64,000 bases of DNA from Podarcis melisellensis (taxonomy: Eukaryota): the NCBI GenBank assembly GCA_964234715.1, contig OZ174276.1; one strand, given 5' to 3'. Position numbers and translations under genes: made by a program. Under the pieces are notes generated by a model. It searched no databases. It had not been told where the DNA came from and saw nothing but the letters and a program-made list of their open reading frames with translations. Shown here in pieces: positions 29,001 through 32,000 of this stretch; position 1 is the stretch's first letter; every line of letters starts with the position of its first letter.

Positions 29001-32000
29001 TTTTCCATTTATTCCCCGCACTGCTGCACGCCGCCCCTCCGTTATCACACACAAAGTCATTTTCTTTGTTCCTATTTGTTTCCTTTGGACAATTTGGACG
29101 CTTTACTCGGGGTCTCCTGGCCAATCTGCCTTTATTTACATGTTTATTTCTGTATCCGTTGTGCTTGGCTCTGCTGTCACGGCGAGGGGCGGGCGCAGGT
29201 AAGATGGTTGGTGAGCAGAGAACAAAAATTCAAACCAATCCAGCGGATGGCCCTGCCTAGCTCGCTGGCCTATTTCTCCAGTGTCTGTGGTGTGACCCCT
29301 TTATTGTTACGCTGGTGGAACTGAACTCTCTGGGGTTTGTGAATCTGGAAAGTTTGGAATGAAGCTGCACCTGAAGATACAGGCACACATGTAAGCTGTG
29401 CATGTCACATCCAAACAGAACAAGAAAAAAAGCAGAAATACATGCATAAACTGTAGGCATGCATGCAATGAGCGTATTTAGGACACAGGATATATGGCAG
29501 GCATGGGGAACATGTGGCCTTGCAGATGTCAGCTCCCATCTTCCCTGGTCATGGGCCATGCTAGCTTAAGCTAATGGAAGTTGTTGTCTACCAATAGCTG
29601 GAAGGCTTCATATTCCTCATCCCTGGTATATGGGAGAGGGATGCCCAAGGGTATGGCAAGACTGAGGTACTGATAGATTTTCTCCAGCAGGAGATCAGTC
29701 AAATAGCAGTTTCTGGAGATACTTAAATTGGAATGGTGAAGTGTTGTATCCCTTCCTCTAGTGTAATGGGCCCAAGCTATGTCCCTAGAGCTGCTTATTT
29801 GTTTAAAGAAGCATCAGGATATACAGTCACAGATCTCCTGACCTAGTCCAGTTTAGCCCTAAAATTCTATCCTAGGAAATTTCAAATTATGCAGTAATAT
29901 ATTTTGAACATTAGGCATCTTCTCATAAAATTGACTTGATTTTCAGTAATGTATTCAGACTGCAAATTCTGGTTCTTCTGCAAAATTTAGTAAGGAAAAG
30001 AGGACACCAAAAGCATTATGTAGAATACGTATTATAGAGTTTGAACTGGGATAAGAAGCTATATTGGGAATGGAGATACAGTCTATGATCAGTGGGACCC
30101 CCTTGAATTGTCAACAGAAATTGCCCCTATGTTTTAAAGTTCTTCCTGCAGCTCTGAGGGATTCCTCTTGTACACCCCCAAAATAAGAAGTTGAGAATCT
30201 TGCAGAATACCTATGTTTGGTTCTAGAGATCTAGGTTCTGTGGCATGCAGCTGTGGTCTCTTGTAGATGGTGGTCTTCAGATACACAGACACATACCAAA
30301 ATTAGATACAGACACATATGATACATACATACACACACAAAAACACCCCACACAGATTTTGAGTCTTGAGGCATACAAAAAGTTGTAAGTACAACTGATA
30401 CTGAGAGATGCAGGGCATGTGTGTGTGTGTTTTAATACAAAAGGATGTATATAAATTGTGTAAGTAAATATCCACAGTATACTAAAATACACAGTACAGG
30501 CATGGCATAACAAATAATTTGCAGCTTTGTATGGCAAAAATAGGCATTCATAGATGCATGTATAGTGCAACATGATACAGAAAGAGATATTTCATTGAAA
30601 TACGTATGTGTGAAATTCCCGGCAATGTGGTTATGTACATATACATGCACGCACATGAGCACATTCAAAGCATACAAAAACTTACGGTACTTTGTAAACC
30701 TAGGATACCTTTCCTAATTATGATTCCTGTTTGGTTTGGTAGGCTTTTCCTTCCTGGTGCTACTTCAATTACTCTCTCTGTCTTGGTTTCTCTCTGTCTC
30801 TTTCTCTCCCTCTCTCCTCTGGTCTTCTTCTGACCATGAATCACTGATAATCAGCGCAAGAAAACTGTAGCATGGCAGCCACTTTCAAGTACCAAGCAGC
30901 ATAGAGCTGATTCAGTGGTTAGCAACACATTCTCCCTAAAATATGTTTCCATATTAGATTGAGGTTAATTATAAAAAAAACCCCACCAGCAAGCAGAATT
31001 CTCTTCTATTTTAACTTGTCCTTCATATTTAACTCTCATGGGCTGGAGTTCTCTCAGACTTCTACAGTAAGGCCTTCTTCTTTTTTTTACTATGCCATGA
31101 ACCATTATTGTCCTCCTGTCTGAACAGACCTCAAGACCACCTCCAGCTCCCCTTTGAGGTAAGTACTTCATTCTCTTCCTTTTTCAAAAAAGTATAATTC
31201 CAGAGATAACTTTCAACAACAATGGACTTAACCTTTCAGCTCTTTGAGATGCAGTCTCCCCTTTCTTCTTCAGATTTATTCCATCTTATAGGTTTCCAGT
31301 TCAGCCTAGATTCTTCCCAAAGACTATTCACCATGTGTGTGACACAACTGCTCACCTAAGGCAGATTAGTTTATACATCTAATTGGGCCTTCTTCATTTA
31401 TCTGATTCTTGTCACCTTTCGCCAGGCTTATGTAAGTTGCAATACCTGCACATCTGGGTTTTGGTAATGTTCAGATCTCTCTTAAATAAGTTTCCACAGT
31501 TCCTGCTTGGATATTGTGATATAGTCTTGTGACACTGTCCTACTGCACTTGAAGAGCAGCTTTTACCACGCTCCACCTTTTGAGGAGTGACTGCTGACTG
31601 GCTCACAGATTCACTTTATTCACAGCTATGGAGCTACTTCCTTTTCACTGCTGGCATAGAGTGGCTGGTCACTTGAGCGATGCCACAGAAGCCTCTTCTC
31701 ACAACTTGGTGCAAGACCCTGGGCGACCACATTGCAGGTTTTTCAGGAGCCTCTCTCCAGCATTCTAGTTCTATAAGGCTGAACTCAAGCTAGATTTCCA
31801 CAACTCTCAAACTACTCTTCTGAAGTTCTCTTGTCCCAATTGGCTGATCACAGATGCAAAATGATTTCATTTGAATAACCAACTTGGCTTCACCTTCCTG
31901 GGTGATTTACAGAGTCTATGTGTACACATCTATCATTTTTTATCATCAACAGCTGGAGTTTAGGGGTCTTATTATCCTGTTGAGGCCATACAAATGAGGT

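What the first reader, a model, noticed from the sequence alone, without database searches (positions are those of the whole stretch)
29057..29216. Candidate modular microexon / recursive splice cassette between CACNA1A exons 46 and 47
Seen: after about 128 nt with no AG (29057-29184, pyrimidine-rich, CpG-retaining, TGC motifs near the end) the sequence reads ggcgAG|GGG CGG GCG CAG|GTA AGA TGG TTG|GTGAGC. There are two acceptors (exon starts 29187 and 29199) and two consensus donors (GTAAGA at 29199, GTGAGC at 29211), spaced exactly 12 nt apart. All are phase 0 like intron 46. Possible products all keep the frame: +GRAQ, +GRAQVRWL, +VRWL, or a zero-length recursive splice (exon 46 ends CAG, regenerating CAG|GTAAGA). 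TGCATG motifs lie downstream at 29399 and 29460, the enhancing position for RBFOX. I know of no exon here in mammalian CACNA1A. Inference: combined with the three exon-47 acceptors, it could diversify the Cav2.1 tail, for example giving the short isoform new ends (...HRQGRAQ* or ...VRWL*, a hydrophobic possible PDZ ligand), or bias long/short choice. Caveat: the first acceptor is a rare GAG.
Basis: partly seen in the sequence, partly recalled or inferred. Interest (0 to 1): 0.78.

Follow-up and report, generated by a model that had tools for sequence, protein, structure and literature searches.

The report
Conserved splice module in CACNA1A intron

Summary
The letters are exactly as described. 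There is a 130-nt AG-free tract, then gAG|GGGCGGGCGCAG|GTAAGATGGTTG|GTGAGC, in phase 0, 2.3 kb into the 7.5-kb intron 46 of a gecko-like CACNA1A.

New here: the motif sits in the best-conserved block of the intron. Window 29033-29429 is 85% identical to Gekko kuhli. The 92-nt core (29137-29228) has 4 differences, against 15 of 82 third-codon positions in exon 46. Both AGs, both GTs and the 12-nt spacing are kept.

An Anolis sagrei RefSeq model (XP_060615822.1) ends its first exon ...[13 protein letters not shown] at this same donor and joins it to exon 47.

Mammals and goldfish have short introns 46 (0.5-1.2 kb) without the element, and their proteins read HRQ|GSSS directly.

RNA evidence is missing. 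Only assembled contigs could be laid, and they show no joint or loose end at the candidate sites.

Verdict: a real conserved element shared by two geckos and an anole, most likely recognised by the spliceosome as a microexon or a recursive or decoy site. Inclusion in mRNA is unproven. The scan had noted this same stretch only as this finding.

The parts
26604..26851 (+). CACNA1A exon '46' (..[11 protein letters not shown]), ending CAG. Donor GTGGGT at 26852.
   Evidence: RNA contigs of X6/X7 join exon 45 to it. The peptide is 82/82 identical to Gekko kuhli, and all 15 nt differences are at third positions.
26852..34385 (+). Intron 46 (7534 nt, phase 0).
   Evidence: It is 10.9 kb in G. kuhli, 524 nt in a kangaroo rat and 820 nt in a seal.
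29033..29429 (+). Conserved intronic block.
   Evidence: 85% identity over 400 nt to G. kuhli L001:5855-6253, while most of the intron does not align.
29137..29228 (+). Core of conservation, holding the upstream UGC tract, both AGs and both GTs.
   Evidence: 4 differences in 92 nt and no indel. P about 1e-4 against the 18% divergence of third-codon positions in exon 46.
29057..29184 (+). AG-free, 68% pyrimidine tract (AG exclusion zone).
   Evidence: It shrinks to 62 nt in G. kuhli, where CCAAT has become CCAGT.
29143..29147 (+). Possible branch point TTTAT (A at 29146), 40 nt before the first AG and 52 nt before the second.
   Evidence: Read from the sequence and identical in G. kuhli. This is inference only.
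29162..29176 (+). TGC..TGCTG motifs between the pyrimidine tract and the AGs.
   Evidence: Both are kept in G. kuhli. This is the position reported for SRRM3/4-dependent microexons.
29185..29186 (+). First acceptor AG (GAG, weak).
   Evidence: Conserved in G. kuhli. G at -3.
29187..29198 (+). 12-nt unit 1, GGG CGG GCG CAG = GRAQ. Its last AG (29197-98) is the second acceptor.
   Evidence: G. kuhli differs only at 29190 (C>A: CGG>AGG, still Arg), which also creates an extra AG. Anolis model P0004 reads ..GEGRAQ.
29199..29210 (+). 12-nt unit 2, GTA AGA TGG TTG = VRWL. Its first six bases are donor 1 (CAG|GTAAGA).
   Evidence: Identical in G. kuhli. The donor ranks 6 of 3471. It is the only MAGGTRAG in intron 46 of both geckos. 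It is used as a donor in XP_060615822.1.
29211..29216 (+). Donor 2, TTG|GTGAGC.
   Evidence: Identical in G. kuhli. Ranks 98 of 3471.
29229..29429 (+). Conserved downstream flank, with a second peak at 29330-29373.
29399..29465 (+). GCATG cluster (TGCATG at 29399 and 29460; GCATG at 29457).
   Evidence: The 29399 copy is not kept in G. kuhli, which has its own TGCATGCATG aligned to about 29441-48.
34386..35078 (+). Exon 47 coding part. Alternative acceptor starts at 34386, 34391 and 34394. Stop at 35076-78.

Best explanation
The stretch is the core of a functional intronic element shared by two geckos and an anole, and the spliceosome recognises it.

Proposed mechanism: U1 snRNP binds the tandem 5' splice sites at 29199 and 29211. 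A weak acceptor region (AG at 29185-86 and/or 29197-98) lies behind a distant branch point, a displaced pyrimidine tract and UGC motifs. A neuronal activator of the SRRM3/4 type helps this acceptor.

Outcome, depending on which AG and GT are paired: a 12- or 24-nt in-frame microexon is inserted between exon 46 and exon 47 (+GRAQ, +VRWL or +GRAQVRWL). Or, when the second AG is used, the strong site CAG|GTAAGA is rebuilt and spliced again, so nothing is left (recursive use).

Shown: the letters, their conservation and the absence of the element from short mammalian and fish introns.

Inferred: recognition by the spliceosome, the regulators, and any inclusion in mRNA.
For: (1) The motifs lie at the peak of the only strongly conserved block of the intron. 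That block is 85% identical over 400 nt. The core has 4 differences in 92 nt, against 15 of 82 third-codon positions in exon 46; P about 1e-4.
(2) Both AGs, both GTs and the 12-nt spacing are identical in G. kuhli. The single change inside the 24 nt is synonymous in the proposed frame.
(3) The 15 residues before the donor in that frame are identical in the Anolis sagrei model XP_060615822.1, which splices this donor to the first exon-47 acceptor.
(4) CAG|GTAAGA ranks 6 of 3471 GT and is the only MAGGTRAG in intron 46 of both geckos. Of the other four in the window, at least two are donors of recognisable exons, at 12024 and 45994.
(5) The layout matches published neural-microexon features: UGC between branch point and AG, pyrimidine peak at -15..-30 (69%), a likely branch point 40-52 nt upstream, a weak 3' site and a strong 5' site.
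(6) No conserved long ORF in any frame, no Rfam family and no unusual RNA stability, so a nested gene or structured RNA is unlikely.
Against: No RNA support. In contigs of four RNA-like runs there is no joint from 26851 to 29187 or 29199, and no loose end at 29186, 29198 or 29210. The only contig across the site (X1) is unspliced. Contigs drop rare forms, and some records are filtered out, so this is weak negative evidence.

Both acceptors are poor: GAG for the first, and 31% pyrimidines plus an AG 12 nt upstream for the second. G. kuhli has an additional AG inside unit 1.

A 7.5-kb intron does not need recursive splicing. A 12-nt recursive exon would be unusually short.

The Anolis model may be an ab initio start extension and not RNA-based. 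Its ATG is out of frame in both geckos.

Every junction-spanning protein found (mammals, birds, fish) reads HRQ|GSSS with no insert. No squamate junction-spanning sequence was seen at all.
Confidence: 0.42

Rival explanations
1. A conserved intronic regulator that never enters mRNA. One form is a decoy or pseudo-exon whose U1 and U2AF sites engage the exon-46 donor or the exon-47 acceptors. That would tune intron-46 retention or the choice among the three exon-47 acceptors (long versus short tail). The other form is a transcriptional enhancer that merely contains splice-like letters.
For: The conservation spans 400 nt, far more than a 12-24 nt exon needs. No spliced RNA form was seen. The acceptors are weak. 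The block holds a local CpG cluster (o/e 0.81, against 0.25 for the window) and a GC box. Read-through of the exon-46 donor would end the protein after 11 codons, so retention would have a defined product.
Against: Neural microexons also have long conserved flanks. An enhancer gives no reason for the conservation peak to coincide with a top-ranked 5' splice site pair and in-frame spacing. Most CpGs outside the core have decayed in G. kuhli, and the CCAAT is lost.
Confidence: 0.33
2. An alternative first exon driven by an internal promoter. Its donor at 29199 joins exon 47, giving a short transcript of the C-terminal tail, as the Anolis sagrei model XP_060615822.1 depicts.
For: The Anolis model starts here and uses exactly this donor. 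A CpG cluster and GC box lie just upstream, and the window has a CCAAT 65 nt before them. About 170 nt upstream of the donor is conserved.
Against: The conserved ATG (29140) is out of frame with exon 47 in both geckos and would stop after about 25 codons. G. kuhli has no in-frame ATG at all between the nearest upstream stop and the donor. CCAAT and several CpGs are not conserved. No RNA contig begins here. Other annotation pipelines invented different first exons before exon 47 (P0001, P0003, P0005), so such exons are typical start-codon extensions. This reading does not explain the conserved second donor or the in-frame spacing.
Confidence: 0.13
3. Chance: ordinary intronic sequence that happens to contain splice-like letters.
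For: Weak acceptors are common in random sequence.
Against: The conservation is independent of how the site was picked. The core makes up about 1% of the intron yet holds the motifs, and it is more conserved than synonymous sites of the neighbouring exon. It is also retained in Anolis.
Confidence: 0.03

Closest known systems
Neural (SRRM3/4-dependent) microexons, 3-27 nt
   Same: Length of 12 or 24 nt and frame-preserving. Neuronal synaptic gene. Highly conserved flanks. UGC motifs between branch point and AG. Pyrimidine tract displaced to -15..-30. Weak 3' site and strong 5' site.
   Different: Inclusion is not shown. The first acceptor is GAG, and G-rich sequence precedes the second. Two units lie in tandem, with the second beginning GTAAGA. 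The element is absent from the mammals and fish sampled, whereas most neural microexons are vertebrate-wide.
Vertebrate recursive splice sites with RS-exons (Sibley 2015 from memory; Blazquez 2018, PMC6224609, abstract seen)
   Same: AG|GTAAG juxtaposition followed by a downstream 5' site that could define an RS-exon. Exon 46 ends CAG, so a strong site would be rebuilt. Conserved.
   Different: The intron is only 7.5-10.9 kb, whereas the classical cases lie in very long introns. The RS-exon would be only 12 nt. The pyrimidine tract ends 20 nt before the AG. No lariat or saw-tooth data.
Decoy (non-productive) exons in retained introns (Parra et al. 2018, from memory)
   Same: A highly conserved, non-coding, exon-like element inside an intron that is rarely or never included.
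   Different: Intron-46 retention and any effect on it are untested here.
Known CACNA1A splice variation: the 6-nt NP microexon (PMC4317164) and the GGCAG acceptor choice at exon 47 (PMC5684673)
   Same: Same gene. Tiny in-frame insertions and clustered acceptors diversify the channel. The three exon-47 acceptors are present in this window.
   Different: No exon between 46 and 47 is described. Mammalian introns 46 sampled here are 524 and 820 nt and lack the element.
Internal promoter making a C-terminal fragment of a calcium channel (CACNA1C CCAT, Gomez-Ospina 2013, from memory; alpha1ACT of CACNA1A, PMC5684673)
   Same: It would give a transcript or protein of the C-terminal tail alone, as the Anolis model depicts.
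   Different: No conserved in-frame start codon in geckos. alpha1ACT starts far upstream and is ascribed to an IRES.

Membership tests
Neural microexon | Exon of 3-27 nt flanked by AG and GT, frame-preserving | tested here: met
   12, 12 or 24 nt between conserved AGs and GTs, in phase 0 like intron 46.
Neural microexon | Observed inclusion in mRNA (junction reads), enriched in neurons | tested here: inconclusive
   Only contigs could be laid. They show no joint or loose end at the sites. Raw reads were not available.
Neural microexon | Strong conservation of the exon and flanking intron | tested here: met
   85% over 400 nt and 96% in the core against G. kuhli. The peptide frame is kept in Anolis. 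Conservation beyond squamates is not met in the mammals and goldfish sampled.
Neural microexon | UGC motif between branch point and AG; extended branch point-to-AG distance; weak 3' site; strong 5' site | tested here: met
   TGC at 29162 and 29172. Putative branch point 40-52 nt upstream. GAG acceptor or a purine-rich -5..-20. Donor ranks 6 of 3471. Criteria taken.
Recursive splice site / RS-exon | Juxtaposed 3' and 5' splice sites (YnAG|GTAAG) that rebuild a 5' site after the first step | tested here: met
   CAG|GTAAGA at 29196-29204, and exon 46 ends CAG. However, the pyrimidine tract is 20 nt away.
Recursive splice site / RS-exon | Lies in a very long intron, with intermediate lariats or a saw-tooth read profile | tested here: not met
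   The intron is 7.5 kb (10.9 kb in G. kuhli). Lariats and saw-tooth profiles cannot be tested with contigs.
Alternative first exon / internal promoter | Transcripts that start upstream of the donor, with a conserved usable start codon if coding | tested here: not met
   No contig starts there. The conserved ATG is out of frame in both geckos, and G. kuhli has no in-frame ATG.
Described RNA family or structured RNA | Match to an Rfam model, or folding energy beyond shuffles | tested here: not met
   No Rfam hit at E up to 5. Folding z-scores are +0.08 and +1.58.

The most novel reading that the evidence does not exclude
Lizards carry a lineage-specific, modular pair of 12-nt microexons in an expanded intron 46 of CACNA1A. 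They insert GRAQ, VRWL or both immediately before the long/short tail switch, or re-splice to nothing. Combined with the three exon-47 acceptors, they would give Cav2.1 tail ends that no mammal has.
Probability: 0.3. Interest if true: 0.65.

Novelty: new member of a known kind. Interest (0 to 1): 0.45.

Why it matters
The C-terminal tail of Cav2.1 sets the channel's synaptic anchoring. In humans it carries the polyglutamine tract of spinocerebellar ataxia type 6, and the exon 46/47 boundary decides whether that tail is made at all.

A conserved, splice-competent element just upstream of that decision point, present in lizards but not in the mammals or fish sampled here, would show two things. 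One is how a lineage adds regulation or new protein ends to an old switch. The other is that it would be a rare example of tandem microexons or short-intron recursive splicing.

Even if it is never included, it marks a strongly constrained non-coding element in a disease gene's orthologue that current lizard annotations either ignore or misread as a start exon.

Tried and rejected
(1) Repeat or transposon copy: there is no second copy in 26-36 kb of the window or in the 22-kb G. kuhli locus. A genome-wide check was not possible.

(2) Known RNA family or structured RNA: none. A local hairpin pairs 29160-29176 with 29180-29197. Of the two G. kuhli changes in it, one keeps a pair and one breaks a pair, so there is no covariation support.

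(3) Nested protein-coding exon: every frame has stops in one or both geckos. The 118-aa ORF across the element has no protein relatives.

(4) Minus-strand exon: no donor-like site on the minus strand.

(5) Short transcript fragments with the Anolis-type junction: a search with P0004:1-60 found nothing.

(6) Deeper conservation:
- The bird locus fetched (L002) looks like CACNA1B, at 34-35% identity, and has no element.
- Kangaroo rat, Weddell seal and goldfish loci have none.
- Look-ups for the Anolis, ibis and bat proteins found no contig on record.
- A metagenome scan for the 24-nt core found nothing.
- Contig L006 is genomic, not RNA.

(7) The bacterial promoter/terminator scan is irrelevant to a vertebrate and gave nothing.

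(8) Not run:
- The large representative protein search. Its clusters at 50% identity hide isoforms, and it was flagged as costly.
- Any joined exon 46-microexon-exon 47 model.

(9) P0006 looked like the human protein. Its contig was not fetched, compared or searched further.
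Full report
**Context.** The window carries the 3' part of a CACNA1A orthologue on the + strand. 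ORF translations show:
- the IQ exon;
- the exon ending ..PRLPAENQ;
- the exon ..MKRSAS..TDVDTG;
- exon '46' (26604-26851, ..[11 protein letters not shown]);
- the last exon '47' (34386-35078, GSSSVSGSP...DEDDCC*).

A MAN2B1-like gene follows downstream. The nearest exon-47 relatives are Sphaerodactylus townsendi (78%), an unnamed Logan contig (83%), and Gekko kuhli and Anolis sagrei (60% each). So the source is a gecko-like lizard. Intron 46 is 7534 nt and phase 0. The finding lies 2.3 kb into it.

- AG at 29055-56 is followed by 130 nt without AG, tied third-longest of 4522 gaps. About 0.35 gaps of that length are expected from AG frequency alone.
- The tract is 68% pyrimidine.
- The sequence then reads gAG|GGGCGGGCGCAG|GTAAGATGGTTG|GTGAGC, with the stated coordinates, spacing and phase.
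- The three exon-47 acceptors and the two TGCATG motifs are also as stated.

The genuine exon-46 donor ranks 10. TTG|GTGAGC ranks 98.

MAGGTRAG occurs five times on the + strand of the window and once in intron 46. At least two of the other four (12024 and 45994) end recognisable coding exons.

The acceptors are poor. The first is GAG. The second has 31% pyrimidines at -5..-20 and an AG 12 nt upstream.

**The decisive new fact is conservation.** One exon-47 hit, a Gekko kuhli model, could be fetched with 10 kb of upstream DNA (L001).
- In the window stretch compared (26000-36500), exon 46 with its edges aligns at 81%, exon 47 at 72% and the 3' UTR at 81%.
- Inside the intron almost nothing aligns, apart from a few 69-87% patches of about 65-210 nt.
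- The exception is one 400-nt block, window 29033-29429 = L001:5855-6253, at 85%.
- Identity peaks at 29137-29228: 4 differences in 92 nt and no indel.

For scale, exon 46 encodes an identical 82-residue peptide in the two species, yet differs at 15 of 82 third-codon positions. At that rate, 4 or fewer differences in 92 nt has P about 1e-4.

Both AGs, both GTs, the 12-nt spacing and the two UGC motifs are identical. The only change inside the 24 nt (29190 C>A) turns CGG into AGG. In G. kuhli too, this is the only MAGGTRAG in the 10.9-kb intron.

**Anolis.** Among the exon-47 hits is XP_060615822.1, 'voltage-dependent P/Q-type calcium channel subunit alpha-1A-like' of Anolis sagrei ordinatus. 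It begins [20 protein letters not shown] and continues GSSSVSGSP...

The 15 residues [15 protein letters not shown] equal the window's translation of 29154-29198 in the frame that is in phase with the donor. MFISV matches the window's ATG at 29140 in another frame, so Anolis must differ by a one-base indel.

Two things follow. The element predates the gecko-iguanian split. And an annotation pipeline joined exactly this donor to the first exon-47 acceptor.

I do not count this as RNA evidence, for two reasons:
- Other pipelines invented unrelated first exons in front of exon 47 (P0001, P0003, P0005).
- In both geckos the conserved ATG is out of frame and would stop after about 25 codons, and G. 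kuhli has no in-frame ATG at all.

A coding alternative first exon is therefore not conserved.

**Outside squamates.** Intron 46 is 524 nt in a kangaroo rat, 820 nt in a Weddell seal and about 1.2 kb in goldfish. No part of the element is detectable there, and the two mammalian introns have no strong donor-like site.

All nine junction-spanning proteins among the hits (seal, kangaroo rat, goldfish, Lates, Silurus, Umbra, an ibis and two unnamed) read ..RQ|GSSSVSGSP directly.

The bird locus I could fetch looks like CACNA1B, at 34-35% identity to both exon peptides. So birds, turtles, crocodilians and amphibians remain untested for DNA. No squamate sequence spanning the 46/47 junction was seen at all.

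**RNA.** The run search returned only assembled contigs. I laid 26560-32559 (exon 46 plus the candidate) on four RNA-like runs from four studies.
- X6 and X7 are truly RNA: their contigs join exon 45 to exon 46. In X7 the exon contig has depth about 204, against 2-6 for intron contigs.
- There is no joint from 26851 to 29187 or 29199, and no loose end at 29186, 29198 or 29210.
- X5, X6 and X7 have no contig over 29160-29359.
- X1 crosses the site with one unspliced 1635-nt contig.
- One X6 contig ends at 26853, two bases past exon 46. I draw nothing from that.

Contigs drop rare isoforms, a 12-nt exon cannot be placed by such alignment, and a filter removes human-like records. So this is absence of evidence, not evidence of absence. 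I built no joined exon model.

**What it is not.**
- Not a repeat within the sequence available.
- Not an Rfam family.
- Not unusually stable RNA: z = +0.08 and +1.58.
- Not a conserved ORF in any frame.
- Not a minus-strand exon.
- Not convincingly a conserved promoter. A local CpG cluster (o/e 0.81, against 0.25 for the window) and a GC box hint at one. But G. kuhli has lost the CCAAT and most CpGs outside the core.

**What it most likely is.** The conservation peak coincides with a top-ranked tandem 5' splice-site pair, two AGs at in-frame spacing, and a 60-nt upstream tract. That tract has the published signature of SRRM3/4-type neural microexons:
- UGC between branch point and AG, found in 74-79% of such exons (10.1101/2024.09.17.613571);
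- pyrimidines peaking at -15..-30;
- a branch point about 45 nt away, and a weak 3' site (10.64898/2026.01.16.699960).

Here the -15..-30 window is 69% pyrimidine, and a conserved TTTAT lies 40-52 nt upstream.

I therefore favour recognition by the spliceosome (0.42). That means either inclusion of a 12/24-nt in-frame microexon, or re-splicing at the rebuilt CAG|GTAAGA. The latter fits the RS-exon logic (PMC6224609), although the intron is short for that.

The rivals are:
- A never-included decoy, splicing regulator or enhancer (0.33). It explains the 400-nt extent and the silence in RNA equally well.
- An alternative first exon (0.13).
- Chance (0.03).

The remainder is left for other explanations. 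That the element is functional I hold at about 0.9.

- The RBFOX argument is weakened. TGCATG at 29399 is TACATC in G. kuhli. A GCATG cluster does persist about 245-265 nt downstream in both species, at shifted positions.
- The full 128-nt AG-free run is specific to this species; it is 62 nt in G. kuhli.
- The proposed products follow arithmetically from the letters, but none is observed.

**Known biology.** CACNA1A has a described 6-nt NP microexon (PMC4317164) and the GGCAG acceptor choice at exon 47 (PMC5684673). Two literature searches found no exon between 46 and 47.

If real, this is a new, lineage-restricted member of a known kind.

Noticed in passing
window 33665-33746: A second short conserved intronic patch, 86.6% over 82 nt against Gekko kuhli, lies about 640 nt upstream of exon 47. 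It may belong to the regulation of the exon-47 acceptors.
   Followed up: no
window 26852-26862 and 34361-34393; L003, L005, L001: The first ~11 nt of intron 46 (GTGGGTGYGGC) and its last ~25 nt, plus GGCAGTAG, are nearly identical between geckos and two mammals, although the intron is 0.5-0.8 kb in the mammals and 7.5-10.9 kb in the geckos.
   Followed up: partly
window 35064-35075; P0001-P0004, P0018: The Cav2.1 tail ends ..DEDDCC here, in three other squamates and in an ibis (..DDDCC). Mammals and fish end ..DDWC. So the DDCC ending noted by the scan (s1-505135) is sauropsid-wide, not a peculiarity of this genome.
   Followed up: partly
window 26606-26851 vs L001:321-566: The exon-46 peptide is 82/82 identical between this species and Gekko kuhli, and all 15 nucleotide differences are at third codon positions. 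Exon 47 is only about 61% identical at protein level.
   Followed up: yes
window 34086-34138: A perfect (TAT)17.7 microsatellite lies about 250 nt upstream of the exon-47 acceptor cluster, inside a 392-nt AG-free pyrimidine-rich zone (33992-34384).
   Followed up: no
window 26852-26887: Reading through the exon-46 donor gives ..[14 protein letters not shown] and then a stop. Intron-46 retention would therefore make a defined short tail.
   Followed up: no
window 38900-39300, 41500-41900, 50300-50700: These are CpG-rich islands (o/e 0.9-1.0). Strong donor motifs at 39602 and 41628 lie near the first two. They are probably first exons of genes between CACNA1A and the MAN2B1-like gene.
   Followed up: no
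window 49423-49485 (-): A weak tRNA match (Rfam RF00005, 32.6 bits), probably a SINE-derived tRNA-like head.
   Followed up: no
window 29533-29566: A 33-nt piece here is shared by several unrelated contigs in runs X1 and X6, with loose ends on both sides. It is a dispersed repeat fragment just downstream of the conserved block.
   Followed up: no
window 35585-36500 vs L001:12617-13547: The CACNA1A 3' UTR is 81% identical to Gekko kuhli over about 950 nt, which is more conserved than the coding part of exon 47.
   Followed up: no
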